A DNA stretch of 64,000 bases from positions 310,001-374,000 of the forward strand of contig NC_047064.1 in assembly GCF_902459465.1 (NCBI RefSeq), given 5' to 3'. This document shows positions 8,501 through 63,318 of the stretch, in pieces. How positions within the stretch are numbered: position 1 is the first letter of the stretch; each line of letters begins with the position of its first letter. Below the pieces are notes generated by a model. It searched no databases. It was not told where the DNA came from and saw only the letters and a list, made by a program, of their open reading frames with translations. Source of the stretch: Asterias rubens. Taxonomy: Eukaryota. The translations under genes were made by a program, and so were the position numbers.

Positions 8501-11500
8501 TTCTGTGCTCAATCTAACGGACCTTCATTGGCATTTTTTGTGCACATTCACAGCCATCCAGCAATTCTTGCCTAGCCCATTTGCAAATTAGATTTGAATG
8601 GTCTTTTACAATGCCTTGTTCAGTCACAAGTGAATGCTCAATTTGATTTCATCAAGCCTAAATTCAGTGTTGCTATGTCACAAGGTTCAGGCCAAGCATT
8701 TTCATTGCAACCTCCATATCAGCAAAGACCGGTATCCTTGCTGTGCCAAACCATTTTATTTAGGAATGTGTGAAGGTGTTTGGCGTCTCTTAAAGTAAGA
8801 AAAAGCTGGCCCTAACCATGTGACATAACAAAACTGGATGTAGTGTGAGGAATTCAAATACAGCATTCACTTCTGACTGAACAAGACTTCGTACCAGACA
8901 TCATTCAAATCGAACCTGCAATTAGGACAAATTGGTGATGGGATTATGCTTTTGATGATACAGTACAAGTAAATATCTTTCTCATAACATACTCTGACTA
9001 TGTGCTAAATTCCATGCTTGTGTCATCAAAGGTTTAATTCCCCCATATCACGTGATCTGCCAAACTAAAATGGCTTTATGAGTGTGTTAATGTAGTGCAT
9101 AGAAGCTGTGTTATTCTGGCCAATGAAGAGGCAAACATTCTGGCCAATGAAGAGGCAAACATTCTGGCCAATGAAGAGGCAAACATTCTGGCCAATGAAG
9201 AGGCAAACATTCTGGCTTTAGTAGAGGCTTTGTATCGGAACTGTGCCAGATTGGGCTCAGAACATCAGCAGTCAATTAACCATTTCTTGCAAAGCTAACA
9301 ATTCTTTCTATTTCTCTTTTTCTCTTTCTCTCTTTACCTCATTCATGGTCCTATCCCTTCAATCTCTTGGGTTATCTGCGTGATATAATCCATCCTGAAT
9401 CCTGCCGTGTGATCCAAATATCATTCCATCCCAATGTATTTTGCACTCATCCCCGTGCGTTCTTTCTACCATTATATTGTTTCCCTCTTGAACCTTCTTG
9501 GTTCCACCCCAACCCCCCTTACCACAACAGAAAACACAGTGCCCCCGATTCTGTCTTTATTTAGTGCCATCCCCTCCTCCAATAAAATCGTTGTCACATG
9601 GGCACCCCCATTTGAAAGCAACATAATGATCCGAGGGTACATCTTGGGTTATGGGGCTGGCATCCCTGATGCCTTCATTGAAACCTTCAGTAGTTCAGAA
9701 ACCCAGTTTACTATTACTAACCTCAAGCCCAGCACTATCTATGTACTCAAACTACGGGCTTTCAACAACGCTGGTGAAGGGATGTCTTTATATAAAGATG
9801 TTGCAACATCAGTAGCAGGCAGTAAGTGATTCTTGATTACCTTCTTGTGCTTGCGTGTATCTGTGGTCGTAAAATAAAAATGGTTGGTCAATCTTATATG
9901 GAATGTTACTTGGAAGTTTCCAATGGAACAACAGTGAAAATAAAACTTTGAACAAACATTGAACGAGTAAAAGCTTTGTGATGATCACCTGATGTAAAAA
10001 CTGAACATTGTATGTTCAACATCTTTAAAAAAAACTGGGCGATATTATCTGGAACAATTCCATAAAACTACTGAAGTAGAAAATATTTGCTTAAAAGTAG
10101 AACATAGTTTGATATTGTATTTTGTCTGGTAACCTATTTCTGGTTAGCAGCATTCAGCATCAGTAACTCTTTATAGGGGATTGACCAATCAGATGATATT
10201 AACAAATTTTTCTCTTGAATACACCTATGATCCACAACACACAACAAGGTAGCTTTACTTAACCCCGTCCAAGACATTCTTCTCATTACCATAGCAACTG
10301 TTCATCTTGAAGTAAAAATTGCAACTTATAAACATAATCACCACCTTCATTTCAGAGCATGTGACATTCCACATGTAGTTATTTCATTTTCAAGTGAATT
10401 TGAGAGACATTTTTTTTCAGACACCATTAAGTTTTTTTATTCCTTAATTTTTTTCCCAACACTAATCCCTTCTTTGGCTAACTGCATCTAAATCATGTGC
10501 ATCTACATTAGGTTTTGGGTTATTGGAATGATATTAAAAGAATAGTTTTTTAATTCTTGGTCTTGATTACTGGCATGTGCCTGATTCTTAAAGCATGATG
10601 TCCAACATCTCCAGTGGATCAAATGCATGAGACCAACTCCTATATTTTTGATTCAGTTTCATCTACGTTAAACATTCCAGAACATTTTTACCCTATTTAT
10701 TAATATTGTCTTGGTACTTTCAACAACCTTTGTGTAAACCCATTTTTAGTCAATTTATTCCCAAATATTTGTGACTATTTCATTTTTTCCATAAATATGA
10801 CGGTCTTCAGCATCACCAAGTTTAAAAGGAAAGTTTCACAAACAGTTCCAAGAAATGCTGGGTTTTTTTCCCAAAGAATATCCTGCAATATCATTAAAAT
10901 TATTCCAAGAAGATTCTGAATTGTTTCTGTCTTTCAAAAACTTATGAAGGTTTGTTTGTGTAGATTGTTTGTGTAGATAAACTCAAATCTTGTCTTAAAT
11001 CAAAAGGATGTACCTCTGGGCTAAACAATTTTAGAAGGTGTTTGCACAAAGTATTTATCAGAAAGGTCATTCAACCTCCAAGATATCTCCTTATTTTATG
11101 AAAACAAAAGTAATTAATTAGCTGTGTTTAAATGGTGACTGGATCCATGTTCCAAACACTCCTTTAGTCTCTGCATTGGAATTGTAGTTGAGTTGGACTT
11201 TCCCCAACCCAGTATTGGCTTATTATTTCTCTGTTAGTAAAAGGAGTATTCATTACCTTTCACAGCCTTGGGGCCTAGCCCAACAAGGACAATACACGTT
11301 ACTACAAGTAAGACAACCCAAACATCCCAAACCTCCAAAATGTTGATTACTTTGTTGTTAGTTATTGTAGTTTATGTCTTAGTGCATTGTGTATAAATTA
11401 TGTTTGTCCCATTGTGTTTTGTACCCAGCCCTTAGTTTGTGAAGTGGCACACGTTGCTCTCCTCGGCAAATCCTCAGATAATTTGTGTCTTCTTCAAATT

Positions 11501-42046: not shown

Positions 42047-42119
42047 ATGGCGTCGTTTCCATGCAACTCTTTGCTGTTGCTGACAACTTTGATAGCAGTG
42101 TTGATGTCGTGTGATGGAC
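42047..42119 (+). CDS. Gene 2 exon 1: signal peptide
   Basis: gcgATGGCG..GGAC|gtaagt; MASFPCNSLLLLTTLIAVLMSCDG with a hydrophobic core. Confidence 0.8.
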
Positions 42120-45100: not shown

Positions 45101-48100
45101 AAAAATCTGACATAACATCTTTAACAAAGTTCACACTGGAATGGTTTAAAACAAAATGGCTTTTCACACACTTTTAATGTGAGAAACTAGAAGTTAGAAA
45201 CTTTTTCCCCACTTTAATAAGTACTCTGTCTATTTGAAAATGAGTACATTGCAAAACTTGATTTGACCTTGGAACCCTTATTGGAGTGGTTTGTGGTTTA
45301 AAAATAACACAGACAGCCCATCTGAAAAAAGTATGTCTCTACTGAAGAAACTTTGGCTTGTAAGAAACCAGACTTTGTTTTTGCAAGGTACACAATAATG
45401 TGAGATAAAGTCTGCACTGATGGAAGCATCCTGCTGTCCAGTAAATTGACTATCTAGTTTTGTAATATGGCCTTTCCCCAGGCTCGTCACCTGGGTTGTC
45501 ATGTCTGGTTGTGTTGCTATGGTTATTTTACCTCTGACTATTGGATCTCTGTGTGATGTTTATTTAGTTTAAAATGTTTTATTGTATGGGGTGTTGTGCT
45601 GTTCTAACTTGAGGTTGGTGTGTGTCTTGCTGTGTACTAGTTTCCCGTCCACATATTTTGTTTCCCCCTCAAGGACACGCAGCAACTGTTTTATGAAGTT
45701 TTAACTGAACAGTTCAGCAGGAAAAAAATAAAGAATTTCAAAATTGTATCAAATTATTGACTTGAAATAGCTTGACATTGTCACTGTGATAACCTAGATA
45801 TTGAATACAACGATGTTGCTGAAACTCCTAAAACATAATAGGATCATGCTGTTTGTACTTCACTCTCTACAAAAATTCTCACAATGTTCAGTCAGACTAG
45901 CATTTTCATCGGTTTAGAACTTGTATTATTGCCATCAAGAGATTTCCTCCCATTTAAAGAAAAACATCATTAAGTAAAGAAATTTGTTAGAACTTGAATA
46001 AATAGAAGGTCTCTGTAATGACAGCCATTTGATTGCGAGCAAAATCAGGAACACTGTAATATGAAGTGGTTTAGTGTGGGGTACTATACTCAAAATAATT
46101 ATTGGCATAAAACCTTTCTTGGTGACGAGTAATGGGGAGACGTTGATGGTATAAAACATTGTGAGAAACGGCTCCCTCTGAAGTGCCATAGTTTTGGAGA
46201 AAGAAGTAATTTTCCACGAATTTGATTTTGAGACCTCAGATTAAGAAATTGAGGTCTCGAAATCAACCATCTAACTGCACACAACTTCGTGTGACAAAGG
46301 TGTTTTTTCTTTCATTATTATCTCGCAACTTCGATGACCGATTGAGCTCAAATTTTCACAGGTTTGTTATTTTATGCATATGTTGAGATACACCAACTGT
46401 GAAGGCTAGTCTTTGACAATTACCAATAGTGTCCACTGCCTTTAAGCTCTTGTTTGTCAGAGTGGGGGATAATGGCATTGTGGGGTCAACAAGATATTTG
46501 ACAATCATTGCTTTACCCTTCTGATGCGATGAGTTACCTTGATAACATTCTCTTTATCAAACAGGTCCTACCGCACCAGACTTCACCAGTTACTTCACAT
46601 CACCGACTAACCTAAGAGTTGAATGGACTCCAGGAACAGATGATCGAGGAGGAACTGTTAATGGATACAGGCTTCATTACAGACTGGGGTCAAAGGGCAA
46701 GATGGTGAAACTCAAGATCCCTGACTCACCATTAATTTATGATATTACAGGTAAAGTGATCCGCTCATTTGCATAATATGTTGATAATAGTTTATGCAAA
46801 ATATAATTTTGCTCCATTATGTCTAAGCATCAACACAAGGATCTATAAGGCATTTATAGAGTGTTCGCCACAGCGATAAATCCAAATAAAGAAAATGCTC
46901 TTTTTTCCTTTAGCATGATATTGTTCTCTGTCTCAAACTTTTTATACACTATATAAAATATCAGTCGTGTCAGCAAAAAAATAGGAGTATTCACCGACAC
47001 ACGGTTGAATCACATGAGTCCTGTGAGCAAAAGAAACAAAAGAATGAATTGTGTTAACTGGATTCACAAGACACGGAGACTTATTATTGAGATCAATCTT
47101 TCATGTCTCACAGTACTTGTTCAAATAAAAACAGTTTAATTCATGTTAAACTTTGTCAGAAATTTGTCTGTAATTTTGATTCTTGTAAAAACAACGTTGG
47201 TCCAGTCAACACTTTGAGCTACAGAAAGCTTTGTGATCTTGTGGATTTTCCCTCAAACTCGAGCCCTGTGCCAAAAATAAAACTTGATTGATACTTTTGG
47301 GGTTGGTAGTGTAATCAGAGCATACATTCCCCAAGTAACATTTTGTAAGGAAACATTTTGTAAATAAGTAGCACTTAAAAAGTTCTAAACAGATTAATAT
47401 TTCCTTCTTGTATTAGTGTTATTATGATGATTATGTTTGTTTTCTAGGTCTCCAGAATTGTGGAGATTATTTTGTAAGGATGGCAACAACTACAACTTCT
47501 GGTTTGAGTCGTTACAGTAGCTTTGCATCAGCAGAGAGTAAGTAACCTTTATACAGTTATAATCTTTTCAAATTTATGGGATTTTTCATCTTTTATTTTG
47601 TTATCAACTGATTATTTTTTTCTTCAAACTTACAGTCCTTTTTTTAAGTGGCGTTGGTTAAGTCTTGAATGAAAATTTGTATAAAAGTTGGCTAACATTC
47701 AAAGTATTACAAAATATAAATCTAATAAAAAGAGAGAAGTTTTCAGAGAGCTGTAGAAGCACACTTAACATATATTTGTTTATTCTGTTTTGTTTTTTTA
47801 ACATAAATTGTTTTTGTTATTGGATAATCCAGAAGTTGCATCAGCGCCCAAGAATCTGAACGTGGTTGCACAGTCTGGCACATCAGCAATGGTAAACTGG
47901 ACCCCTCCATCCAAAAGTGCTTGCATTGGTGGTTACCAGCTACAATATGGTCCCAATGAGAATAGTCTGAACACGATGACGCTACCTGCGGACTTAGACC
48001 AGTACATCCTAGGGGATTTACAGTCGGGTACCAGCTATCTGCTGACGTTAGCAGCTACTTCTACGGGTGAGGTGGGAGAGGAAGCTTATGCACAGTGGTA

Positions 48101-51100
48101 CCAAGGTAAGATGGAAGTCCTACACATTCTGATATCACTTTTACTGCATGCCCTCTGAGTAAGATATTGGGGTGCATTCTATTCTTATCAATAAGGCATG
48201 CTACTTTCCTTGGATCAGCTGATTTCCTCTTTTATTCTCAGTTTTACCATTCAAAATTGAAAAAATACTATACAAAATCATTACAATTTGAATTGACCTC
48301 TTTTTTTGTGAAGTTACAGTTGCATGCCTGATCATTACTGTTTGACCTCTAAGGTGGTTTAGTGGAATGACTTAAATATATAAGGTGTAAAAATTGTGTG
48401 ATGCCATGTTTCTTTTGGTAAGTACTTGGTGACTTCTCTGATGTGACAACTTTTAGATATAAGACATTCTAAATAGTAAACTTTTATTTTGAGGGAGTGT
48501 TGGCTCTAAAAAAGAGCCTGTGTGGTTTTGCCTATCAAACATATACTCTGCTCGTCTTCAGGAGAATTTTTTAGATCTGGTTTTGCTTCATCATGTAACC
48601 TTACTTTTCTAGTTGAGACCTAAAGGACTAAAAAGAGATACTGAGATAGGTTACCAGACTACAACACTGGAACTATGTATCAAGACCTGAGTGATCGCAT
48701 CAATGGTTTGCATTTATTGTACCTTTTTTAATAATCACAAACTAGATATTTGAACGAAGCAATGTGGGAACATAAACTATAATTGTTAACAGAGGTTATT
48801 GTGTCCAATCAGCACCAGAAAGTTCATCTAAAGTACCTCCAATACCAAGAAGGATTCGAAGCAGCCAGTCCGACACAGAGATAGTGGTAACTTGGGAACC
48901 TCCATCAGATACAAGTATTCCAATTGAAGGATACACCCTGACCTATGGAGAAGGAGTTGCTTCTGAGCACCAACGAAGATTCACAAGTACTCAAACTGAG
49001 TTTACCATCACCGATCTTATTCCTGATACTTCATATGTTCTCAGTCTGAAAGCATTTAATCAAGCTGGTGAAGGGAAGGCATTGGTTTTAGAAGCCTCAA
49101 CAGTGCCAAGCAGTAAGTTAATCGTCAGCTATTTCCTTGCAATCTGAACTTCGACTCAAAGAGAAGATCTTTGTTTCTTACTGAAAGCTTTTAAAGCACA
49201 ATACACATTCATAATCTGAACATACATCCTCGGGGATAAACTAGAATTTACCCTTTGGGCTGTTTTAGTTCTTCAATTCAATAAAATTCAAAAATTGTAT
49301 ATTAAAACATGTATCGCAGTTAAAACTGAACACATGCTAACATCAAATATGTTTTAAAAATACATCAAATAGAAATTAACAATAAGGAGATAAACAAGAA
49401 GTTATTCTCTGTTTGGAAAGGATCTTACATACATTGTGTTAACAGTCAATGACAGTCAATGTTTCAGCGTAACAACTGGTGAAGTTGAGTGTCAAATCAG
49501 TTCATTACAATGACCTTGGTGTTAAACAATACTACATTTTTTCAGTGCCAGGAAGTGTGGTTCCTCCAATACCACTAGGCATTCAAAGCAGCCAGTCCGA
49601 CACAGAGATAGTGGTAACTTGGCAAGCCCCGTCTGATGCAAGTATTGAAGGATACATCCTGTCCTATGGAGTAGGAGCTCCGACTGAGTACCGAGAGCGA
49701 TTTCCAAGTACTCAAACTGAGTTTACCATCACTGATCTCATCCCCGATACTGCATATGTACTCAGTCTGAAAGCATTTAATCAAGTTGGTGAGGGGCCGG
49801 CATTGTATTTACAGGCCTCGACAGTGCAACAAAGTAAGTCTCCTGATTACACTTTCAAGCAGCATGCTTCATCATAAATTTTCATCATTGCTTAGTTGCC
49901 AAAATTAGTGTCTCAATTTAGTGCTGTCCTTCATCATCAAAGTACCATCCTTTCAGTCTCAGTTTAGTACCCAGCTCATTCACAATTATTTCATCATCAT
50001 CGCTTACAGGTCAAAATTATAGTCTTATCATCAAGTAATACTGCTTTCCATCATCAAGCAAGTAACTAGCTCCATTCATCAGTTAAGTTAGTACTCTCCG
50101 TCATCTTCCATCTTCATGCTAGTATCATCTTTTGTCGTCAAGGGAGTACCGTCTCTCATCTTCATGTTAGTGTCAAGGTAGTACCATCCCTCATATTCAA
50201 TGTAGTACCATCTTCAGGTGTCAAGGAAGTACCCCACTTCATCTCATTTTCATGAGATAGTCCTCTCCTTCATGATGGCATCAATGCCATCATGCATCAT
50301 CAAGTTAGTACCCAACTTCATCATCATATTCATAAGCCAGCCATCTACTTTATCATGAAGTTAGCACCATCTTTCATTGGCAAGTTAGCACCCAGCTCCT
50401 TCATATCCATCAGTAAGCTCTCTCCATCATGATACTAGAAGCCCCACCACATCATCAAGTACCCAGCTTCATCATCATATTCATTAGAAATTCACGTCCT
50501 TCGTGATAGAGTCAGTTTCACCTCTCATTTTCTCATAAGTACTATCTTTCATTGGCAAGTTAGCACCCAGCTCCTTCCTATCCATCAGTAAGCTCTCTCG
50601 ATCATGATACTAGAAGCCCCACCACATCATCAAGTACCCAGCTTCATCATCATATTCATTAGAAATTCACGTCCTTCGTGATAGAGTCAGTATCATCTCT
50701 CATTTTCTCATAAGTACCATCTTTCATTGGCAAGTTAGCACCCAGCTCCTTCATATCCATCAGTATGCTCTCTCGATCATGATACTAGAAGCCCCACCAC
50801 ATCATCAAGTACCCAGCTTCATCATCATATTCATTAGAAATTCACGTCCTTCGTGATAGAGTCAGTTTCACCTCTCATTTTCTCATAAGTACTATCTTTC
50901 ATTGGCAAGTTAGCACCCAGCTCCTTCCTATCCATCAGTAAGCTCTCTCGATCATGATACTAGAAGCCCCACCACATCATCAAGTACCCAGCTTCATCAT
51001 CATATTCATTAGAAAATTCACCTCCTTGGTGATAGAGTCAGTATCATCTCTCATTTTCTCATAAGTACTATCTTTCATTGGCAAGTTAGCACCCAGCTCC

Positions 51101-54100
51101 TTCATATTCATCAGTAAGCTCTCTCCATCATGATACTAGAAGCCCCACCACATCATCAAGTACCCAGCTTCATCATCATATTCATTAGAATTTTCACCTC
51201 CTTCGTGATAGAGTCAGTATCATCTCTCATTGTCTCATAAGTACTATCTTGCATTGGCAAGTAAGCACCCATTTCCATCGAATTCATCAGTTGTGTCTCT
51301 TCTTCAAGGTGTTAAACAGCCTACCATCTCTTATCATCAAGTACCAACCTCCAGCATCATATTTTGAGTTAGTCGTCTCTTTCATAAAGTTGATAACATC
51401 TTCCATCTTCAATCAATGTAATAAAGCACTGAACAGGTACAAGATGCATGGGCCCAGAGCCAGGAGGAACGATGAGTGCGCAGGCACGCCTGTGCAGTTG
51501 GAGCAACCTGTCTGGAAAGACGACCAGAATGTCTCGATAAGCAGTGTATGTTACACTGTCTCTTCTATTGTTACTCTCTAGTCTCATTTGTTAACTGACC
51601 TACAGTCATCTTCACATCAGTTGCCTTATTTAACAACTTACCTTTTTCCATCAGTTGTCAGTTTCCATAGTTTACTGTTTTCCATTTGTTGCCATATATT
51701 ATTATTTGCCTATTTCCATCAGTTGCCTTTTTCCATAATTCCTTTTCCCATAATTTACCTTCTTTCCATCAGTTGCCTTTTTCCATAGTTCCCTTTTTTT
51801 CATTAGTTGCCTTTATCCCTCAGTTCCCTTTTTCTATCAGTTGCCATCTCCACTCAGTTGCCTTTTTCCATCAGTTGCCTTTTTTCCCACCAGTTACTTT
51901 TTTCAATCACAAATATCCAACGATTTTCAACTCCAGTGTTTTTTATGAGTTTACTTTAACAACATTAATGTTACCTAACATTCTAACCTGGTCAGAAGCC
52001 AAATATGCCTCATAATTTCAGTCTAGACAGTCAATTACAATGTAATCCTTTTTCACAACTTCCAAAAGATGTCTCCAGCAGACCGAAACTAATTTGTGTG
52101 ACCCATTCTTCCATTCTGTGGTTGATTTGGGAAGCTTTTTTACAGGCCCAATTTCATCGCTATGCTCAAGTTCTTAACAATTTCCTGCATAGCAAAAATG
52201 AGAAGGATACCAGTCACTGAATGGCATATGTGCCATGATGTTTGGATGGTAATCCTAAGTTGCTAAGCATTGCTGTTTGTGCTTAGATACTTTTAGGAGT
52301 TACACATGACTTCTTTAAAGTGAACAAGAAATTGTATTTTGGCTGATAACCTTATTCTGGCTTAAAGCAGCCCAGATTATAAAAACAATGAAAAGATTCA
52401 TGTGTACAAATTTAAAATGAGAGTCTTGTTCTATTTCATCCTAAATGGACTACAACAATGAATCCTTGAATTGCTGAGTATTTACAGTGTCATGATAGAT
52501 GAAATAAAATGTGACTTCAAAATTGTAATTTGTCCATCGGGGAATTTAACAATTACTATGTGAAAAGGAGATAAACAAATATACTTGTCGGAATTTACAA
52601 CAACAACAACAACAACAACAACAATATTTTGCACACTTTTTTGTAATGAACTGTCTTGTGCAACTTACTTAACTCATCATATTTTCTTTTTGTATGTGTC
52701 TAGCTGGACCACCAATTGCACCTACAAACATCCGTGCCAATCCAACGTCACCCCAGACTGCCATTATATCATGGAGCCCTACATCATCAGGTCTCACTCG
52801 GTATACCTATCTTTATGGTCCAGTTGGCTCTCCAGATAGTAAACTAACCCAAGGACACATTGAAGCTAGTTCCATGATGGTTGATCTAGAAGGATTAGAT
52901 CCTGGTGTGGAGTACGTGATTAAGGTTTCATCAGTCAATAATGTTGGTGAGAGTCATCCTGCTTCACTTCTATGGTCTCAACCTGGACCTGCTACACAAA
53001 GTAAGACTCTCTGTCTTTAGGTTTTCTTGTAAATCTTTTCAAGTTTTCTTACAATTTAGTCTACTGATGGTCTGTCACAATCATAATCGTTCTGCTGAAC
53101 TAAGGACCATCTTAGGTCTTGTACTAAACTCAATGGCATAACTAAAGGGGCAAGTGAAGCATGGGGAATGTCGACAGATCATTATGTGTGGCTTCTCCAT
53201 GAGTTTAAAAAATACTCTTTCAAGAGATCTTTGCACCACCACATCCTTTCAGTGCTTCAAGTTCAGTTTAAAAACATATTTTTTTAACTGTTCTTTCTAA
53301 ATCTTAGTCAAATTTTTTGAATAATTGTTACCACTAATTTTCTCTAAAGTGCGCCTTTATTGACAGATATGTGCTCGGTATAGATATATTATTATTATTA
53401 TCATGCAATCTTGTACCTTCTTATGTTGATCAGAGCCTCCAGAGATCCCTCTACCAGCTGCTCCTGGTCAAGTCTCAGTCCAAAGCACCTCACCCCGTAG
53501 TGCAGTCATCACATGGACACGCCCTGCAGGAAGCATCCATATTGCTGGATACATTGTAGGGTTCGGACTAACTGGTGCATCACAGAGTGAACTAATGTTA
53601 AGAAGTGTTGCATCAGAACAGCTTGCTCATGAGATTGAAGGCTTGAAAGTTGGTACTAAGTATAGAGCTACAGTTCAAGCATATAATAATGATGGTGATG
53701 GGCCGGTAGCAAGGGCTGAATGGCATCAACAAGATGTACCAGAGCAACTCAGTAAGTACATCCAATTAAAGTTTGATTAGACATGAGAATATTGTGCAAA
53801 ACTGCAATCTATGCTTGAACTTGAATATAGTCATCTGAGAAATTTGAGTCAATGCACAACTTTTATCCCTCGGGGTCTTGTACACAAACACTATGAAAGT
53901 AAAATAAAGAGCACTTAGAAAAAGTAGATCAGTCAAAAACAGAAAACAGAGAGATGTTGAATGGTAAAGTGCATCACTAAATATGGGAAACGGTAAAAAA
54001 TAACCCAAAAAACAAACATATACACGCACAAACGAATACGCCTTGTAGTTGTAGTTAACAGATGTTTCTGTTTAACTGTTTTCATTCATTCGGCCTACAT

Positions 54101-57100
54101 TTTAAGTGTTTACATGTCTAAACTTTTGGCTGTTGGTATAGATTGTTTCCACATGTCAATATATGCCTGTGAAATTTTTTCACAGGACTGGGGAAATTAC
54201 AGAGTATACAGTGCTAACACACATCGGTGTATGGGTAGATAAACCAAAATTAATAAAGTTAGAAAGCTTGATGCAGCTTCAAGCCAAAACTGAAGTTGTC
54301 ATTAAAGATTATTATGACGTTATTAATATTATCCCCCAAGGTTTACCAACCCAACCCAGAGGTGTCTTGGCCTACAGCTCTTCACCATCCTCCATAGATA
54401 TCAGCTGGATGTTATCTGAAATAACGGAACCAATCAGTGGATTTCAAGTTTCCTACGGAACTAATCCAGAAGCTGAAGAGTTCCGAGTTGAAGTAGAGAG
54501 AGAATCAGATTCAGTAGAGATACAAGACTTGAAGCCTGATAGTTTATACTATCTCAAGATTTATGCAATAAATGCAGCTGGGAGGAGTGATGCAGTCAGA
54601 AGAAGTGTACAGACTTTGGGTGAGTTTATTTTGAATTCATGGCCTTGCCCTCAGGATACGTAGTTACACTTTTCGAGGCAACAGGGCCTTTCCCTCAGGC
54701 AACCTAGTTACAGGCAACTTGAAGGCAACCAATTGCAGTGCATGCTACAGGACCATTTTGGTGGCACATGAGTCTTTCTTGAACATTATCTTATAAACCA
54801 CAAGAAAAAAAGGTGATCTTTAAAATGTGAATGGGTTTCCTTCTTGGAGATTGCCTGAAACTGGTTGCTTGTGTGACATACCCCTCAATTCTTAAGATGA
54901 CAAGTCAAGAAAATAAAATGTTTAAGATGATAAGTGAGGAACTTGTGGACCAGGTTGTCTCAGTGGTTTCTTCACTGCCTTTCCCCTCTACACGCCCTGG
55001 TTCACATCCCATCTCAGACCAGAGCCTTGCATTTGGGTTGGGTTTTCAGTCCCTACCTGATTGGGCGAATTTTTCCTACGTGGGGTTTTCTTCTCATAGA
55101 TGAAACATGACGTTCTTCATCATCTCATGTTTTCATACTTAACTATGTTGGATGTGTTCTAAAATAAATTAAAATATAACAAAACGTTGATAGCTAACTT
55201 GCATAGTTTTCCCACACATTCTTATAACAAAACAATGCCTTACAACCTGTTTGTTTAAATACGAAGTCATATTTGTTTTTGACAACAATTTTGTTTCTTT
55301 TATTTCCAGATTTGCCACCTGGTAAGTTTATCTTTTCATTTCTCTTTTCTTTGGGATTTAGTTTCATAAAAAGTGATAATGCCTTTTATGTTTTTTTTGA
55401 AAAGTTTCTCTGCACACGTGTCATTTTGTAATACATTTTGTTTTGTGTTATTCTACAAATTGTTTTAGAAAACTCAACAAACGTTTAAAAACTTTTTTAA
55501 ATGGCATCAAGGAAATTTGAATAGTTTACCTTTATAAACTATAGAGACATAGAGATATGTGAGTGTGATATGCGCTGTACAAAAATGGTTCTTTGTTATT
55601 ATTGTTTTTATTGTTTAAACTCTAAGACAATGAGGAATCTTGATTGTTATTGTTGAATTCTTATGGAGTTACAAATGATTCCTGGTTTGATTTAACACTG
55701 ATGGAGACCTCTTTAGACTATTGATCATGTATACCTTCATCGTGTTATCTCGAAAAACCTGGAGTTTCTGATTCATTGTTGTTTTCACAAATAATTTGTT
55801 TTCCAAAACATTTAATTTCTTAAAGACACTGGACACTATTGGTAATTGTCAAAGACCAGTCTTCTCACTTGGTGTATCTCAACATGTGCTTAAAATAACA
55901 AACCTGTGAAAATTTGAGCTCAATTGGACATCGAAGTTGCGAGATGATAATGAAAGAAAAAAAACACCCTTGTCACATGAAAATGTGTGCTTTAAGAGGG
56001 TAGATTTCTAGACCTCAAAAACACCCTTGTCACATGAAGTTGTGTGCTTTAAGAGGGTAGATTTCTAGACCTCAAATTCAGGCCTAAAAATGCTCTAAGC
56101 AGTGGATATTACAACAGAAAAAAAGTCTGAAATATAAATGTATATATACAGAGGAGCGATGTAATCATCAACAGCAACAGTGCACGGAGCAATTTGGCAC
56201 CCTGCCCTCTGACGAGGAGGATGGGAATACAGTGTGCCCAAGAATCCTTCAAATTCTTAACTGTCTTCAGTTGCTACGGGATACCTGCATGCACGAAGAT
56301 GGGTACCGGGGAAAGGTTGATACAGTTCGTGGCACGTTCCTGAGGAAATCGTGTAATAGAAACCCAAGGTCACCAGCTGCTGGGGAGGTTATTGCAGGGG
56401 TAGCTGCTCCAACAGGTATCCCTTAATGAGGTTGACCCCCTCCAGCACCTTGCCCCCTCCTCCATCTCTCCCTGATAATGGCTCCAACAGGTAGCCCTTA
56501 ATGAGGTTGACCCCCTCCAGCACCTCTCCCCCTCCTCCATCTCTCCCTGATACAGCTCAAACAGGTAGCCCTTAATGAGGTTGACCCCCTCCAGCACCTT
56601 GCCCCCTCCTCCATCTCTCCCTGATAATGGCTCCAACAGGTAGCCCTTTACAAGGTTGACCCCATCCAGCACCTCTCCCCCTCCTCCATCTCTCCCTGAT
56701 ACAGCTCAAACAGGTAGCCCTTAATGAGGTTGACCCCCTCCAGCACCTTGCCCCCTCCTCCATCTCTCCCTGATAATGGCTCCAACAGGTAGCCCTTTAC
56801 AAGGTTGACCCCATCCAGCACCTCTCACCCTCCTCCATCTCTCCCTGATACAGCTCAAACAGGTAGCCCTTAATGAGGTTGACCCCCTCCAGCACCTTGC
56901 CCCCTCCTCCATCTCTCCCTTATAATGGCTCCAACAGGTAGCCCTTTACAAGGTTGACCCCATCCAGCACCTCTCCCCCTCCTCCATCTCTCCCTGATAC
57001 AGCTCCAACAGGTAGCCCTTAATGAGGTTGACCCCCTCCAGCACCTCTCCCCCTCCTCCATCTCTCCCTGATACAGCTCCAACAGGTAGCCCTTAATGAG

Positions 57101-60100: not shown

Positions 60101-63100
60101 AGTGTAATATTTTACTTCTGGCATTTTTTTAATATTTTTTTTTTATTAATTTTTTTAGGGATTTGAATGGCTTTATTACCCAAAGTTCATGATAATCTCT
60201 TCAGTTTTTTTTGCCAAGTATGGTTTAAAATGCTGCAATACTGCCTGCAAAACCTAATACTTAGAGAAGCATGCTCCTTATATAGCATGAATGGATAATG
60301 TGTAATATTGATGTGACTTAACAGTTATAAAGAAAGGAATAGTATTGTAATTAATAGTTATTAATAAATCAGCATTATTTACACTAATTAACTAAGTAAA
60401 AATAACTAATGTTAATTAAATTAATGTCCTATTCTTGAATAGCATACTGTTCCTCTCCTCTGTATTAAGGAAACCAATTCAATCAAATGAACACTCACTA
60501 TGGTTACTACACATGCATAAAACACTTGAATGATTAAAGAGTTGGGAGAGATTCATCAATTAGGACACAATAAGTATATCCAGCAGTTTGATTGTTTCCT
60601 TAATTGGATGAAAGTATAAAGCAGGGCCCAATGGTAGAGAGCTGCATAAGCAAACAAAGTGCTTAAAAATCTTCTATGAACCCCAAATAAGCATTGTTAA
60701 ACCTATTCTAAGCCTAATGTTGTTGTGCTAATAGACCTGTTGTGCTTAATAAGCTTTAGGAAGTTGGAGCCAGGTTTTAATCTGGCTGGTAACAAAAGTC
60801 CAAAATATGCAAGAAAAACTGAGTACCTCCTAAAATGTTCTTCTAACTGGTCTTCCTGGAATTACTTCCACAGAAGTGATTGAACCTCCAGTTAACTTGC
60901 AAACTACAATCGTGGATACATCAACAATTCGTCTTTCATGGACTGATTCCAGCTTAGGACATTCACAGGTTGTGAATGATAACCGCTTCTACAATATCCA
61001 ATATGGAGTTGCTGGAGAGGAGAGGTGAGAAACGATTAAAGAGTATTAAATCTTGTTGGAGCTGTTCAATTGTTTTAATCCTATTTAGATTTTTTAAGGT
61101 ATTCCCGGAAATCCGGAGCGGTTATCCTTTGCAGGAAGACCAATCCGTAATTGGAATACACAATCTCAGAAACATATATGACAATAACGTTTCTCAAATT
61201 CAAATATTTGGGATAAAAGCGGACTTATTTTGCCTTATTTTGACTTCTTTCTTAATTATGCTTTATCTTAAGAAGCTGTTGTACTTCTAACCAAGTCAGT
61301 TTTTATTGCCATTCATTTTAAGAGTGATTACCAAACGAATACAGACTCTTTAAAGGTTCCCTAATAGGATTAAAACTGTCTCTAGCTACCTAACTAATCT
61401 CAGTAGTCTAGTTTGTAAGACCTCTGCTCTGGAAGACTCTTTAAAGGTTCCCTAATAGGATTAAAACTCTAATCTCAGTAGTCTAGTTTGTAAGACCTCT
61501 GCTCTGGAAGACTCTTTAAAGGTTCCCTAATAGGTTTAAAACTGCATCTAGCTACCTTACTAATCTCAGTAGTCTAGTTTGTAAGACCTCTGCTCTGGAA
61601 GACTCTTTAAAGGTTCCCTAATAGGATTAAAACTGTCTCTAGCTACCTAACTAATCTCAGTAGTCTAGTTTGTAAGACCTCTGCTCTGGAAGACTCTTTA
61701 AAGGTTCCCTAATAGGATTAAAACTCTAATCTCAGTAGTCTAGTTTGTAAGACCTCTGCTCTGGAAGACTCTTTAAAGGTTCCCTAATAGGTTTAAAACT
61801 GCATCTAGCTACCTTACTAATCTCAGTAGTCTAGTTTGTAAGACCTCTGCTCTGGAAGACTCTTTAAAGGTTCCCTAATAGGATTAAAACTGTCTCTAGC
61901 TACCTAACTAATCTCAGTAGTCTAGTTTGTAAGACCTCTGCTCTGGAAGACTCTTTAAAGGTTCCCTAATAGGATTAAAACTCTAATCTCAGTAGTCTAG
62001 TTTGTAAGACGTCTGCTCTGGAAGACTCTTTAAGGGTTGCCTAATAGGTTTAAAACTGCATCTAGCTACCTAACTAATCTCAGTATTTTAGTTTGTAAGA
62101 CGTCTGCTCTGGAAGACTCTTTAAAGGTTCCCTAATAGGTTTAAAACTGCATCTAGCTACCTAACTAATCTCAGTAGTCTAGTTTGTAAGACCTCTGCTC
62201 TGGAAGACTCTTTAAAGGTTCCCTAATAGGTTTAAAACTGCATCTAGCTACCTAACTAATCTCAGTAGTCTAGTTTGTAAGACGTCTGCTCTGGAAGACT
62301 CTTTAAAGGTTCCCTAATAGGATTAAAACTGCATCTAGCTACCTAACTAATCTCAGTAGTCTAGTTTGTAAGACATCTGCTCTGGAAGACTCTTTAAAGG
62401 TTCCCTAATAGGATTAAAACTGTCTCTAGCTACCTAACTAATCTCAGTAGTCTAGTTTGTAAGACGTCTGCTCTGGAAGACTCTTTAAAGGTTCCCTAAT
62501 AGAATTAAAACTGCATCTAGCTACCTAACTAATCTCAGTAGTCTAGTTTGTAAGACGTCTGCTCTGGAAGACTCTTTAAAGGTTCCCTAATAGGATTAAA
62601 ACTGCATCTAGCTACCTAACTAATCTCAGTAGTCTAGTTTGTAAGACGTCTGCTCTGGAAGACTCTTTAAAGGTTCCCTAATAGGTTTAAAACTGCATCT
62701 AGCTACCTAACTAATCTCAGTAGTCTAGTTTGTAAGACGTCTGCTCTGGAAGACTCTTTAAAGGTTCCCTAATAGGTTTAAAACTGCATCTAGCTACCTA
62801 ACTTATCTCAGTAGTCTAGTTTGTAAGACCTCTGCTCTGGAAGACTCTTTAAAGGTTCCCTAATAGGTTTAAAACTGTCTCTAGCTACCTAACTAATCTC
62901 AGTAGTCTAGTTTGTAAGACCTCTGCTCTGGAAGACTCTTTAAAGGTTCCCTAATAGGATTAAAACTCTAATCTCAGTAGTCTAGTTTGTAAGACCTCTG
63001 CTCTGGAATTGCAGCTGGAAGTCTACATAAATAACCTTTCTGAATCATTAACGGTTGACAGTGAATTTATACTTTATTTGTTTTGTTTGACTTCAGGAAG

Positions 63101-63318
63101 CTTAACAAACGCACTCGAGAAACAAGTTACGAGATTGACTTATTTTCTACTTTATTTATTTGACTTCAGGAAGCTTAACGAACGTACTCGAGACACAAGT
63201 TATGAGATTGATGATCTTCTACCTGGTGTTTCATATCAGTTTACAGTTCAGCTCATATTGGATCCGCAACGTAGGAGTGCTCTTAGTGAACCAGTTGTTG
63301 ATGCAACCAGGGATCCAG
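42047..63318 (+). CDS. Gene 2: signal peptide plus at least 8 FN3 domains, Ig-less Neogenin/DCC-derived paralog (3'-partial)
   Basis: 13 in-phase exons: signal peptide, FN3-like, six FN4-type domains, FN5-like. One FN4-type copy matches gene 1 FN4 at 43/90 residues without gaps (manual count). Intron positions match gene 1 FN3 and FN5. Confidence 0.85.
42422..42809 (+). mobile_element. TTAA-type MITE family D
   Basis: ttaa|aggaacattacagaattg..caattctgtattgtgcct|ctaa. Confidence 0.75.
43348..43386 (+). CDS. Gene 2 exon 2 (39 nt; completes the signal cleavage site)
   Basis: gtacag|..|gtaagt; phase 1-1; (P)STALALYAENSD(C) with an A-L-A signal peptidase motif. Confidence 0.65.
43648..44016 (+). 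mobile_element. TTAA-MITE family A copy with the right TIR cut off
   Basis: Collinear with 27949-28334; ends at ..taaccaatag where family B begins. Confidence 0.85.
44019..44379 (+). mobile_element. TTAA-MITE family B, full length
   Basis: aaagccattatacactt..aagtgtataatggctttaa. Confidence 0.8.
46088..46445 (-). mobile_element. TTAA-MITE family A copy (reverse orientation)
   Basis: Reverse complement of 27949-28334; one TIR intact (..gtgtccactgcctttaa). Confidence 0.85.
46565..46750 (+). CDS. Gene 2 exon: FN a N-part (Neogenin FN3-like)
   Basis: aaacag|..|gtaaag; PTAPDFTSYFTSPTNLRVEWTPGTDDRGGTVNGYRLHYRLGSKGKMVKLKIPDSPLIYDIT. Confidence 0.85.
47448..47537 (+). CDS. Gene 2 exon: FN a C-part
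   Basis: ttctag|..|gtaagt; LQNCGDYFVRMATTTTSGLSRYSSFASAE. Confidence 0.82.
47833..48105 (+). CDS. Gene 2 exon: FN b
   Basis: atccag|..|gtaaga; VASAPKNLNVVAQSGTSAMVNWTPPSKSACIGGYQLQYGPNE..GDLQSGTSYLLTLAATSTGEVG. Confidence 0.9.
48813..49112 (+). CDS. Gene 2 exon: FN c (FN4-like)
   Basis: aatcag|..|gtaagt; KVPPIPRRIRSSQSDTEIVVTWEPP..IEGYTLTYGEG..TEFTITDLIPDTSYVLSLKAFNQAGEG. Confidence 0.92.
49546..49833 (+). CDS. Gene 2 exon: FN d (FN4-like, close duplicate of FN c)
   Basis: tttcag|..|gtaagt; VVPPIPLGIQSSQSDTEIVVTWQAP..IEGYILSYGVG..YVLSLKAFNQVGEG. Confidence 0.92.
50366..51272. repeat. 175-bp tandem repeat, about 5 copies
   Basis: atcatcaagtacccagc recurs at 50451, 50626, 50801, 50976 and 51152. 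Confidence 0.93.
52704..53000 (+). CDS. Gene 2 exon: FN e
   Basis: gtctag|..|gtaaga; GPPIAPTNIRANPTSPQTAIISWSPTSSGLTRYTYLYGPVG..EGLDPGVEYVIKVSSVNNVGES. Confidence 0.9.
53434..53751 (+). CDS. Gene 2 exon: FN f
   Basis: gatcag|..|gtaagt; PAAPGQVSVQSTSPRSAVITWTRPAGSIHIAGYIVGFGLTG..EGLKVGTKYRATVQAYNNDGDG. Confidence 0.9.
54341..54619 (+). CDS. Gene 2 exon: FN g
   Basis: cccaag|..|gtgagt; LPTQPRGVLAYSSSPSSIDISWMLSEITEPISGFQVSYGTNP..QDLKPDSLYYLKIYAINAAGRS. Confidence 0.9.
55310..55321 (+). CDS. Gene 2 candidate 12-nt microexon
   Basis: ttttgtttcttttatttccag|atttgccacctg|gtaagt; phase 1-1; (D)LPP. Confidence 0.65.
55820..56078 (+). mobile_element. 3'-truncated TTAA-MITE family A copy with an internal duplication
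   Basis: ttaaagacactggacactattggtaattgtcaaagac..; aaaacacccttgtcacatgaa..gacctcaaa is duplicated. Confidence 0.8.
56407..57717. repeat. C-rich 74/75-bp satellite with largely alternating units
   Basis: ctccaacaggtagcccttaatgaggttgaccccctccagcacc..ccccctcctccatctctccctgata(atgg|cag). Confidence 0.95.
58046..58101. other. Perfect 25-bp stem / 6-nt loop hairpin
   Basis: accatggaggaaggaagagaaggag-tttgag-ctccttctcttccttcctccatggt. Confidence 0.9.
59266..59679. mobile_element. MITE with about 44-bp imperfect TIR and TA/TATA ends (Tc1/mariner-like)
   Basis: tataggttttctcggacaaattcgg..ccgaaattggccgagaaaacctata. Confidence 0.75.
59883..60005. repeat. About 41-bp tandem repeat x3
   Basis: tcttgattcttgattcatgctataactgaaccaatgatata. 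Confidence 0.85.
60874..61024 (+). CDS. Gene 2 exon: FN h N-half (FN5-like)
   Basis: ccacag|..AG|gtgaga; VIEPPVNLQTTIVDTSTIRLSWTDSSLGHSQVVNDNRFYNIQYG resembles Neogenin FN5 (WADNSLPKHQKITDSRYY); phase 1-2. Confidence 0.88.
61344..63008. repeat. Satellite of 91-bp (x15) and 75-bp (x4) units
   Basis: gactctttaaaggttccctaatagg..ctgctctggaa; 15x91 + 4x75 = 1665 bp, which equals the span. Confidence 0.95.
63170..63318 (+). CDS. Gene 2 exon: FN h C-half
   Basis: cttcag|..|gtaatg; KLNERTRDTSYEIDDLLPGVSYQFTVQLILDPQRRSALSEPVVDATRDP; phase 2-1. Confidence 0.87.

What the first reader, a model, noticed from the sequence alone, without database searches (positions are those of the whole stretch)
47833..54619. 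Six-fold exon amplification of the FN4-type module
Seen: six consecutive single-exon, phase 1-1 FN3 domains (273-318 nt) lie between the FN3-like and FN5-like domains, exactly where Neogenin has one FN4 exon. Most show the FN4 strand-C signature (GYQLQYG, GYTLTYG, GYILSYG, RYTYLYG, GYIVGFG, GFQVSYG versus GYILGYG), and c, d and f show the AFNxxGEG/AYNNDGDG end. Established: symmetric exons duplicate without frameshift, and DCC FN4 contacts the netrin LN domain. Inference: a multivalent or diversified ligand-binding array in which each exon is individually skippable.
Basis: partly seen in the sequence, partly recalled or inferred. Interest (0 to 1): 0.78.

Follow-up and report, generated by a model that had tools for sequence, protein, structure and literature searches.

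The report
Six-exon FN3 array, neogenin-like gene
A starfish gene that descends from the guidance receptor neogenin, but encodes a secreted protein, has six one-exon fibronectin domains where the parent has one: all six are expressed and conserved, two are clear copies of the parent's fourth domain and are skipped together in some transcripts, and the same origin is only probable for the other four.

Summary
Six GT..AG-bounded, phase 1-1 exons (273, 300, 288, 297, 318 and 279 nt) lie at 47833-54619. Each passes Pfam fn3. RNA contigs of two Asterias species carry the b>c>d>e>f splice joints.

The exons match RefSeq XP_033624169.1, "neogenin-like isoform X2" of Asterias rubens, at 96-100% per tblastn segment, so the exons themselves are already annotated. 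That protein has a signal peptide, an FN3-like domain, b-g, a 4-residue micro-exon, FN5, FN6 and a thyroglobulin type-1 tail. It has no Ig domains and no P3 motif, so it looks secreted. It sits just downstream of the neogenin gene.

- **c and d:** these are unambiguous FN4 copies. They score 79-91 bits against an FN4 class model that sorted 36 of 36 control domains correctly. They evolve in concert and are skipped together in an unannotated isoform.
- **b, e, f and g:** they are conserved (dN/dS 0.09-0.44) but carry no FN4 profile signal.
  - For an FN4 origin: ML trees, an FN4-specific glycine, nearest-neighbour ranks, exon structure and position.
  - Against: profile scores put b nearer FN3 and g nearer FN1/FN2, AU tests do not exclude those placements, and unrelated FN3 domains land on FN4 in 4 of 12 control trees.

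Verdict: a real expanded array. Two-fold FN4 duplication is shown; six-fold is probable (about 0.6). A multivalent netrin-binding role is not supported.

The parts
42047..42119 (+). Exon 1 of the neogenin-like gene: start codon and signal peptide (MASFPCNSLLLLTTLIAVLMSCDG), with a phase 1 donor
   Evidence: The translation matches residues 1-24 of P0209 and is followed by a GTAAGT donor
46565..46750 (+). First half of the FN3-like domain (class FN3, weakly assigned)
   Evidence: 100% tblastn match to P0209 residues 26-87. The phase 1 intron is at the same place as in neogenin FN3. Class HMM: FN3 36 bits against FN2 31.
47448..47537 (+). Second half of the FN3-like domain
   Evidence: The loose end of an RNA contig before 47833 maps to 47508-47537. 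100% tblastn match to P0209.
47833..48105 (+). Exon b: FN3 domain, 273 nt, phase 1-1. Class unresolved: profiles favour FN3, trees favour FN4.
   Evidence: dN/dS 0.11.
48813..49112 (+). Exon c: FN4-type FN3 domain, 300 nt, phase 1-1. Skipped together with d in one isoform.
   Evidence: FN4 class HMM 91 bits with a margin of 40. Best single-domain PDB matches are neogenin/DCC FN4.
49546..49833 (+). Exon d: FN4-type FN3 domain, 288 nt, phase 1-1. Paralogue of c (74% amino-acid and 83% DNA identity, within the exon only).
   Evidence: FN4 class HMM 79 bits. The c>d joint is in 4 of 4 runs.
52704..53000 (+). Exon e: FN3 domain, 297 nt, phase 1-1. No class signal; its closest relative is f.
   Evidence: dN/dS 0.44.
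53434..53751 (+). Exon f: FN3 domain, 318 nt, phase 1-1. Its nearest neighbours are e, b and the starfish neogenin FN4.
   Evidence: dN/dS 0.19.
54341..54619 (+). Exon g: FN3 domain, 279 nt, phase 1-1. Its near neighbours include c and d, but profiles favour FN1/FN2.
   Evidence: dN/dS 0.09. A 72%-identical exon exists in a further species (P0002).
55310..55321 (+). 12-nt phase 1-1 micro-exon. It supplies the last two bases of the Asp codon, Leu-Pro-Pro, and the first base of the next Glu codon in the linker between g and FN5.
   Evidence: ag|ATTTGCCACCTG|gtaagt fits residues 702-705 of P0209
56152..56415 (+). Optional 264-nt phase 1-1 cassette. It encodes 88 residues with 6 Cys, is not an FN3 domain, and is present in RefSeq isoform X1 of A. 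amurensis.
   Evidence: P0153 against P0004 alignment; coordinates
60874..61024 (+). First half of the FN5 domain, true DCC/neogenin FN5 class
   Evidence: The top 11 PDB sequence matches are all neogenin/DCC FN5. Class HMM 57 bits. The phase 2 intron is at the same place as in neogenin FN5.
63170..63318 (+). Second half of the FN5 domain. FN6 and the thyroglobulin type-1 tail lie beyond the window.
9531..9821 (+). Reference: the single FN4 exon of the upstream neogenin gene (291 nt, phase 1-1, GYILGYG)
   Evidence: Leave-one-out FN4 score 92 bits.

Best explanation
The six exons form the middle of a transcribed, conserved gene, RefSeq 'neogenin-like', that lies directly downstream of the starfish neogenin gene. 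It encodes a protein that looks secreted: signal peptide, one FN3-class domain, the six-domain array, a four-residue micro-exon linker, FN5, FN6 and a thyroglobulin type-1 tail.

The array most likely grew by repeated tandem duplication of the one symmetric (phase 1-1) exon that encodes FN4 in the parent gene. There appear to be two age classes.

- Old copies (b, e, f, g): they have diverged until no FN4 profile is left, yet they remain under purifying selection.
- Younger pair (c, d): they are still recognisably FN4, exchange sequence by gene conversion, and behave as one alternative cassette. They are included together or skipped together, which keeps the reading frame.

Shown here: the exon structure, transcription, splicing and the c+d skip, selective constraint, the FN4 identity of c and d, and the FN5/FN6 identity of the flanking domains.

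Inferred: the FN4 origin of b, e, f and g. Also inferred is the function. The protein would be a soluble neogenin-ectodomain derivative whose FN4-type modules (0 or 2, set by splicing) together with FN5-FN6 could bind netrin- or RGM-type ligands, while the four diverged domains act as conserved spacer or as new binding modules.
For: - **Structure and expression:**. A spliced contig of a third starfish species holds b-g in one frame.
- **Constraint:** pN/pS is about 0.11 between the two Asterias species over b-f. dN/dS against the third species is b 0.11, c 0.34, d 0.36, e 0.44, f 0.19 and g 0.09.
- **c and d are FN4:** they are 45-48% identical to the starfish neogenin FN4. They score 79-91 bits against an FN4 class HMM with margins of 40 or more, and that classifier got 36 of 36 leave-one-species-out controls right. 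HHalign gives 134-138. The best single-domain PDB matches of c are neogenin/DCC FN4.
- **Kinship of the gene:** the FN5 first half matches only neogenin/DCC FN5 among the top 11 PDB sequences. Intra-domain introns have the same position and phase as in the neighbouring neogenin FN3 and FN5.
- **FN4 origin of b, e, f and g, trees:** the clade {six FN4 references + b-g} appears in every ML analysis. Support is 98/92 with 53 rows, 94/91 without c and d and 79/86 with another alignment and model, and 84/64 with 46 FN3 domains of other families added. A tree that keeps the four away from FN4 is 11.4 log-likelihood units worse, AU p = 0.05.
- **Glycine after strand C:** 6 of 6 in FN4, 0 of 30 in the other DCC/neogenin classes, 3 of 46 in other animal FN3 domains, and 6 of 6 in b-g.
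- **Nearest-neighbour ranks among 90 FN3 domains:** the top three for f are e, b and the starfish FN4; e has f second; g has c second and d fourth.
- **Position and exon type:** the array fills exactly the FN3-FN5 interval, where the parent has one single-exon FN4.
- **Concerted evolution:** c and d of the third species are 81% identical to each other but 71-74% to their Asterias orthologues, while the N-terminal segments stay orthologue-specific.
Against: - **Profile methods see no FN4 signal in b, e, f or g.** Class-HMM scores against FN4 are 24-33 bits, which is the off-class background. b scores best on FN3 (43 against 33) and g on FN1/FN2 (35 and 34 against 24).
- **HHalign agrees for b and g:** b FN3 58 against FN4 39; g FN2 47 against FN4 31.
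- **Closest solved relatives are not FN4.** For b, e and g they are tenascin, fibronectin or PTPRD domains; for f the best neogenin hits are FN6 (about 33-34 bits), roughly level with DCC/neogenin FN4 (29-32).
- **AU tests** do not reject b with FN3 (p = 0.35) or g with FN1+FN2 (p = 0.16).
- **Tree control:** 4 of 12 unrelated FN3 domains added singly attach to FN4, with SH-aLRT 72-99. In two trees FN6L was placed with a nematode FN3 at 94/96 and 97/94.
- **The glycine is not exclusive:** it also occurs in this gene's FN5.
- **Exon type is not exclusive:** the parent's FN2 is also a single phase 1-1 exon.
- **Function:** c and d keep only 6-8 of 15 FN4-diagnostic residues, and an arginine invariant in FN4 is glutamate in both. 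Binding was not tested.
Confidence: 0.6

Rival explanations
1. Mixed origin. Only c and d descend from the FN4 exon. b is a copy of FN3. e, f and g come from FN1/FN2-type or other FN3 exons that were duplicated or shuffled into this intron-rich interval. The array would then be an assembly of unrelated single-exon FN3 modules.
For: - Class HMM: b scores FN3 43 against FN4 33; g scores FN1 35 and FN2 34 against FN4 24; e and f show no preference.
- HHalign gives the same picture for b and g.
- The best pairwise hits of b are FN3 domains of neogenins, including the starfish's own.
- AU tests do not reject b+FN3 or g+FN1/FN2.
- Unrelated FN3 domains reach FN4 in one third of control trees.
- The parent's FN2 is also a single symmetric exon.
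Against: - The FN4+array clade is recovered in all ML analyses, including one with tenascin, collagen VII, Dscam and FNDC3A domains added.
- The FN4-specific glycine is present in all four domains.
- f links e and b to FN4, and g links to c and d, in rank tests. The same gene's FN3L, FN5L and FN6L show no such affinity.
- FN3 is a two-exon domain in both genes, so a single-exon copy would need an intron loss.
- No FN1 or FN2 exon exists in this gene.
- Domains of certain class in this gene (FN3L, FN6L) have also decayed to near-background scores, so a missing profile signal is weak evidence.
Confidence: 0.3
2. A multivalent netrin-binding array. All six domains keep the FN4 ligand surface, so the protein offers six netrin LN-domain sites, each of which can be removed on its own by exon skipping.
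For: - All six exons are symmetric, so any subset could be skipped in frame.
- FN4 is the high-affinity netrin site of neogenin and DCC (PMC8063088, PMC5563286, PMC10871540).
- c and d are FN4-type.
Against: - b, e, f and g carry only 2-3 of the 15 residues that define FN4 from nematodes to starfish (up to 5 for g in the third species), and they score at background on the FN4 model.
- Among the joints listed, only the joint skip of c and d was seen.
- c and d themselves lack 7-9 of the diagnostic residues.
Confidence: 0.05
3. c and d are mutually exclusive alternative exons, in the manner of Dscam, so each transcript carries only one FN4-type domain.
For: They are adjacent, of the same phase, and 74% identical. 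This is the usual anatomy of mutually exclusive exon pairs.
Against: The c>d splice joint (49112|49546) is present in all four RNA runs. The alternative form joins b directly to e and so removes both. The RefSeq models and the third species' transcript contain both.
Confidence: 0.01

Closest known systems
FN4 domain and exon of DCC/neogenin netrin receptors (solved in 4PLN, 4PLO, 7NDG; the high-affinity netrin LN-domain site)
   Same: c and d match this class in sequence. The whole array occupies the FN4 position between FN3 and FN5. A short separately encoded linker exon follows it, much as in the parent gene's FN4-FN5 linker.
   Different: There are six domains instead of one, and four of them have no FN4 profile. 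The host protein has no Ig domains and no P3 motif and ends in a thyroglobulin type-1 module, so it is not a receptor.
RefSeq models XP_033624169.1 (A. rubens) and XP_071789284.1 (A. amurensis), 'neogenin-like isoform X2'
   Same: They hold the same exons in the same order. tblastn segments of the A. rubens protein cover the window exons at 96-100% identity.
   Different: These are automatic names only. I found no paper on this gene in the searched library. The isoform without c and d seen in RNA contigs is not among the RefSeq proteins retrieved.
Alternatively spliced FN3 cassettes of tenascin-C, and the extra domains of fibronectin (from my own knowledge, not tested here)
   Same: One FN3 domain per symmetric exon, arrays enlarged by tandem exon duplication, and in-frame inclusion or skipping of domains.
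   Different: The gene family and ligand context differ. Here only one two-exon cassette is seen to be optional.
Alternative splicing of the DCC FN4-FN5 linker (PMC5563286, PMC10871540, PMC4930329)
   Same: Splicing changes the region that sets how FN4 and FN5 engage netrin. This gene also has a micro-exon and an optional 88-residue cassette in the equivalent linker.
   Different: In DCC only the linker length changes. Here whole FN4-type domains are removed.

Membership tests
Fibronectin type III domain (Pfam PF00041) | Score above the curated gathering threshold (25 bits) | tested here: met
   b 48, c 59, d 47.5, e 46, f 47 and g 45 bits
DCC/neogenin FN4 class, exons c and d | Best and clearly separated score on an FN4 class profile built from six bilaterian DCC/neogenins | tested here: met
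   c 91 and d 79 bits, with the next class at or below 51. Controls were 36 of 36 correct. HHalign 138 and 134. The best single-domain PDB hits of c are neogenin/DCC FN4.
DCC/neogenin FN4 class, exons b, e, f and g | Best score on the FN4 class profile | tested here: not met
   FN4 scores are 24-33 bits, which is the off-class range. b is best on FN3 and g on FN1/FN2. They carry 2-3 of the 15 FN4-diagnostic residues in A. rubens.
DCC/neogenin FN4 lineage (descent), exons b, e, f and g | Monophyly with FN4 in a domain tree, with alternatives rejected | tested here: inconclusive
   The clade is recovered at 79-98 UFboot. AU gives p = 0.05, 0.35 and 0.16 for three alternatives. Unrelated controls attach to FN4 in 4 of 12 trees.
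DCC/neogenin receptor family (whole gene) | Four N-terminal Ig domains | tested here: not met
   In P0209 the signal peptide is followed directly by the FN3-like domain, and no Ig family appears in the Pfam scan of the orthologue
DCC/neogenin receptor family (whole gene) | Transmembrane helix and a cytoplasmic tail with the P3 motif | tested here: not met
   The C-terminus is a Cys-rich region with a thyroglobulin type-1 repeat (38.5 bits, cutoff 20.6). A motif search for P3 finds it only in the true neogenins P0149 and P0158. No transmembrane predictor was run; I saw no hydrophobic helix when reading the sequence.
DCC/neogenin receptor family (whole gene) | FN5 and FN6 of the family's own classes | tested here: met
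   FN5L scores 57 bits on FN5 with a margin of 30. FN6L scores 37 bits on FN6 with a margin of 17.
Cassette (skippable) symmetric exons | Same intron phase on both sides, and transcripts both with and without the exon | tested here: met
   This holds for c and d taken together. The b>e joint has depth 5.2 against 5.7 for b>c in one run and 23 against 63 in another. For b, e, f and g only the phase condition is met; among the joints listed none shows them skipped.

The most novel reading that the evidence does not exclude
The gene encodes a soluble modulator of netrin/RGM signalling that is tuned by splicing. Isoforms with c and d would carry two FN4-type netrin LN-domain sites plus the FN5-FN6 site and could cross-link or sequester ligand. 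Isoforms without c and d would keep only the FN5-FN6 site. The four old, strongly conserved copies (b, e, f, g) would be new binding modules that arose from FN4 by duplication and change of specificity. This would be a secreted antagonist or bridge built from a guidance receptor's own ligand-binding stalk.
Probability: 0.15. Interest if true: 0.7.

Novelty: new variant of a known kind. Interest (0 to 1): 0.42.

Why it matters
The case shows a guidance-receptor ectodomain being recycled. A tandem copy of neogenin has lost its Ig domains and shows no membrane anchor or P3 signalling motif. It gained a secretion-type architecture and enlarged the very position (FN4) that gives the parent its strongest netrin contact.

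If the FN4-type pair still binds netrin, starfish would have an endogenous soluble competitor or cross-linker whose valency is set by splicing. That is directly testable with recombinant domains.

It is also a clean example of tandem exon copies of two ages: old copies diverged beyond class recognition but still constrained, and a young pair homogenised by gene conversion and spliced as a unit.

The limits are real. The exons are already in RefSeq. The gene was found only in Asterias, one further starfish, and an exon-level hit in a fourth assembly. No function has been measured.

Tried and rejected
- **Representative-protein search:** the query was the FN5 first-half exon, chosen to avoid swamping by giant multi-FN3 proteins (a titin fragment with 8 matched stretches already outscored neogenin FN4 with exon c). 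Most of the list was still multi-FN3 proteins, but it yielded the key full-length protein P0004 and two true neogenins.
- **Word-based homologue searches:** the exon g query found only the locus's own ORF and one 72% exon in ENA assembly ERZ26222911, whose DNA could not be fetched. Two searches with the full protein found orthologues only in Asterias and one further starfish, and none in other echinoderm classes. This is not evidence of absence, given the word and length filters.
- **14-domain tree from the window alone:** it resolved nothing except c+d+FN4.
- **Single-domain placements:** they looked strong for f and g (98/92 and 97/91) but are devalued by the control with unrelated domains.
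- **Mapping netrin-contact residues on FN4:** the readable papers give only the netrin side (F55) and show the receptor residues in figures. Xu et al. 2014 (PMC4369087) is not held. Class-diagnostic residues were used as a proxy.
- **Block duplication (b-c-d copied to e-f-g):** not supported by the pairwise identities.
- **DNA-level similarity:** none between c or d and the parent FN4 exon, and none between the introns flanking c and d. The c/d duplication is therefore not recent.
- **Extra FN3 exon relics:** none turned up in the array's introns.
- **Structure prediction:** not run, because FN3 folds do not separate these classes.

Full report
**What is in the window**

The + strand holds two genes. 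The first is the 3' part of a DCC/neogenin gene. It has FN3-domain exons from 2.2 to 14.7 kb, including a single FN4 exon at 9531-9821. It also has a membrane segment with a cysteine string near 17 kb and the P3 motif near 36.0 kb.

The second gene starts at 42047 with a signal peptide and runs off the window's end. The finding lies inside this second gene.

**Check of the observation**

All quoted motifs are present. Each of the six open frames is bounded by an AG acceptor that leaves two leading bases and a GT donor that leaves one trailing base.

| Exon | Coordinates | Length (nt) |
|---|---|---|
| b | 47833-48105 | 273 |
| c | 48813-49112 | 300 |
| d | 49546-49833 | 288 |
| e | 52704-53000 | 297 |
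| f | 53434-53751 | 318 |
| g | 54341-54619 | 279 |

All six are phase 1-1. All score 45-59 bits on Pfam fn3, whose cut-off is 25.

**Transcription and splicing**

I laid RNA-derived contigs of four public runs on 47800-53790. Two runs are from the window's species and two from a close relative.

- GT..AG joints b>c, c>d and d>e appear in all four runs, and e>f in three.
- c and d are therefore used together and are not mutually exclusive.
- A further joint goes from the donor of b straight to the acceptor of e, removing c and d together. Its depth is 5.2 against 5.7 for b>c in one run, and 23 against 63 in another species' run.
- That skip keeps the frame, because all four introns involved are phase 1.
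- Four further joints were not displayed by the tool, so other skips cannot be excluded.
- g lay outside the 6-kb limit. Its use rests on three things: a contig that continues 2215 nt past f, the RefSeq model, and a spliced contig from a third species.

**Identity of the gene**

A search with the FN5 first-half exon returned a 1065-residue protein. Its 90% cluster holds two RefSeq entries, both named "neogenin-like isoform X2": XP_071789284.1 of Asterias amurensis and XP_033624169.1 of Asterias rubens. tblastn segments of the A. rubens protein cover every exon listed here at 96-100% identity. The exons are therefore already annotated.

I found no paper about this gene in the searched library.

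The domain order is:

1. signal peptide
2. an FN3-like domain in two exons
3. b, c, d, e, f, g
4. a 12-nt micro-exon (55310-55321) that contributes the linker residues Asp-Leu-Pro-Pro
5. FN5 in two exons
6. FN6
7. a cysteine-rich tail with a thyroglobulin type-1 repeat (38.5 bits, cutoff 20.6)

There is no Ig domain and no P3 motif, and I saw no membrane helix when reading the sequence. No transmembrane predictor was run. The product therefore looks secreted.

Kinship with neogenin is real.

- The FN5 first half matches only neogenin and DCC FN5 among its top 11 solved-structure sequences, with the conserved W-T-D...Q...D-x-R-F/Y-Y motif.
- The introns inside the FN3-like and FN5 domains sit at the same position and phase as in the neighbouring neogenin gene.

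**Constraint**

Between the two Asterias species the RNA contigs show 29 synonymous and 10 non-synonymous differences in b-f. That gives pN/pS of about 0.11, and b has 5 synonymous and no non-synonymous changes.

A third starfish has a 3.5-kb spliced, transcript-like contig (L001, assembly GCA_014845345.1) with the whole array in one frame, 83% identical overall.

| Exon | dN/dS against the third species |
|---|---|
| b | 0.11 |
| c | 0.34 |
| d | 0.36 |
| e | 0.44 |
| f | 0.19 |
| g | 0.09 |

All six are therefore functional coding exons. c, d and e evolve fastest. An exon 72% identical to g, with an fn3 ORF about 500 nt upstream, exists in a fourth assembly.

**c and d**

They are 74% identical to each other and 45-48% identical to the starfish neogenin FN4.

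I built class profiles for FN1 to FN6 from six DCC/neogenins: starfish, bed bug, shrimp, spider and two nematodes. In leave-one-species-out tests these profiles classified 36 of 36 domains correctly.

- On these profiles c scores 91 bits and d 79 bits for FN4, with margins of 40 or more.
- HHalign gives 138 and 134.
- The best single-domain solved relatives of c are neogenin and DCC FN4.
- DNA similarity between c and d (83%) stops at the exon borders, so the duplication is not recent.
- In the third species c and d are 81% identical to each other but only 71-74% identical to their Asterias orthologues, while their N-terminal segments remain orthologue-specific. This is the signature of gene conversion between old duplicates.

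**b, e, f and g: evidence against an FN4 identity**

Pairwise identities to everything are 17-30%, no higher than between unrelated classes.

| Domain | Class HMM, bits | HHalign score |
|---|---|---|
| b | FN3 43, FN4 33 | FN3 58, FN4 39 |
| e | FN2 27, FN4 26 | FN2 49, FN4 48 |
| f | FN2 34, FN4 33 | FN4 54, FN2 50 |
| g | FN1 35, FN2 34, FN4 24 | FN2 47, FN4 31 |

Closest solved relatives are as follows:

- for b, tenascin-R and fibronectin;
- for e, fibronectin;
- for f, Dscam and neogenin FN6, about level with DCC FN4;
- for g, PTPRD and contactin.

They carry 2-3 of 15 FN4-diagnostic residues in A. rubens (up to 5 for g in the third species), against 6-8 in c and d.

This test has low power in this gene. 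FN3L and FN6L, whose class is fixed by position, also score only 36-37 bits with margins of 5 and 17.

**b, e, f and g: evidence for an FN4 origin**

The clade made of the six FN4 references plus b-g appears in every ML tree.

| Data set | UFboot/SH-aLRT |
|---|---|
| 53 rows | 98/92 |
| Without c and d | 94/91 |
| L-INS-i alignment with LG+G4 | 79/86 |
| 46 FN3 domains of tenascins, collagen VII, FNDC3A, Dscam2 and a giant protein added | 84/64 |

- A tree that forces FN4+c+d next to FN5 without the four is 11.4 log-likelihood units worse (AU p = 0.05).
It is absent from all 30 other DCC/neogenin domains, occurs in 3 of 46 other animal FN3 domains, and is present in all of b-g.
- Among 90 FN3 domains the three best partners of f are e, b and the starfish FN4. 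e has f second. g has c second and d fourth.
- The same gene's FN3L, FN5L and FN6L show no such affinity, so this is not a gene-wide composition effect.

**Cautions on the tree evidence**

- AU does not reject b with FN3 (p = 0.35) or g with FN1+FN2 (p = 0.16).
- Twelve unrelated FN3 domains added singly to the reference set landed on FN4 four times, with SH-aLRT 72-99. Two of those four carry the same glycine.
- In two trees FN6L joined a nematode FN3 at 94/96 and 97/94.
- The parent's FN2 is also a single phase 1-1 exon, 5064-5357, so exon structure alone does not single out FN4.
- The glycine also occurs in this gene's FN5.

**Weighing**

The case for serial tandem duplication of the FN4 exon rests on position between FN3 and FN5, one-exon symmetric structure, the consistent ML grouping, the glycine, and the similarity chain (FN4 to c/d to g, and FN4 to f to e and b). 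This is the most economical account, and I put it at about 0.6. About 0.3 goes to a mixed origin in which b, and perhaps g, come from other classes. That c and d are FN4 duplicates is settled.

**Function**

FN4 is the high-affinity netrin LN-domain site of neogenin and DCC. FN5 binds netrin LE3. FN5-FN6 bind RGM. Splicing of the FN4-FN5 linker changes netrin assembly (PMC8063088, PMC5563286, PMC10871540).

By inference, this secreted protein could bind the same ligands through c, d and FN5-FN6, with splicing setting the number of FN4-type modules to two or none.

Four domains have no FN4 profile, and c and d have replaced about half of the diagnostic residues, including an arginine invariant in FN4 that is glutamate in both. 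I could not map receptor-side contact residues, because the readable papers show them only in figures.

**Earlier notes of this scan**

One follow-up note called the upstream gene the only DCC/neogenin-type receptor of A. rubens. That still holds, because this second gene is not a receptor. Another first-stage note on this same stretch called it an Ig-less neogenin-derived paralogue. My data agree and add that it lacks the P3 motif and any visible membrane helix, and ends in a thyroglobulin type-1 module.

**Verdict**

This is a real, expressed, conserved six-domain array that public annotation already models. Two-fold FN4 duplication, with concerted evolution and joint cassette splicing, is shown. 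Six-fold FN4 amplification is probable but unproven. The ligand-array function is speculative.

Noticed in passing
window 42047-64000 and beyond (protein P0209): The whole gene encodes a protein that looks secreted: signal peptide, 10 FN3 domains, then a Cys-rich tail with a thyroglobulin type-1 repeat. It has no Ig domains and no P3 motif. I know of no described protein that combines neogenin-type FN5-FN6 with thyroglobulin type-1 modules.
   Followed up: partly
window 55310-55321: A 12-nt phase 1-1 micro-exon contributes the linker residues Asp-Leu-Pro-Pro between g and FN5. It sits in the position equivalent to the alternatively spliced FN4-FN5 linker of DCC/neogenin.
   Followed up: partly
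window 56152-56415: An optional 264-nt phase 1-1 cassette encodes 88 residues with 6 Cys and is not an FN3 domain. It lies in a GC-rich stretch (0.51 against about 0.36 elsewhere) and is included in RefSeq isoform X1 of A. amurensis (P0153). Its origin is unknown.
   Followed up: partly
window 60874-61024 against 12615-12796: The FN5 first half of the secreted paralogue keeps the bilaterian consensus (SWTDSSLGHSQVVNDNRFYNI, about 50% identical to human neogenin). The FN5 of the true neogenin next door has diverged from it ([21 protein letters not shown]).
   Followed up: partly
L001 (third starfish species), exons c and d: c and d are more alike within that species (81%) than either is to its Asterias orthologue (71-74%). 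This indicates gene conversion between the two exons.
   Followed up: yes
window 50369-51271 and 51615-51909: The d-e intron holds a 175-bp tandem repeat (5.1 copies, 96% matches) and a degenerate 17-bp array, with strong negative GC skew.
   Followed up: no
window 48200-48400 and 52000-52400: These intronic stretches have very high RNA-contig depth and many variant joints in all four runs. They are probably dispersed repeats transcribed elsewhere in the genome.
   Followed up: no
window 63101-63170, and 13282-13400 in the upstream gene: There are short local duplications next to exon borders. One is a repeated acceptor region before the FN5 second-half exon. The other is a repeated [10 protein letters not shown](T/R)FESGR segment after the neogenin FN5 exon.
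   Followed up: no
protein P0093 (Mya arenaria, 'TFPI1-like'): A clam protein made of Kunitz, WAP, Kazal-like and Ig modules contains two copies of a DCC/neogenin FN5-like domain carrying the W-T-D...Q...R-R-Y-Y motif. This would be another case of this receptor domain reused in a secreted protein.
   Followed up: no
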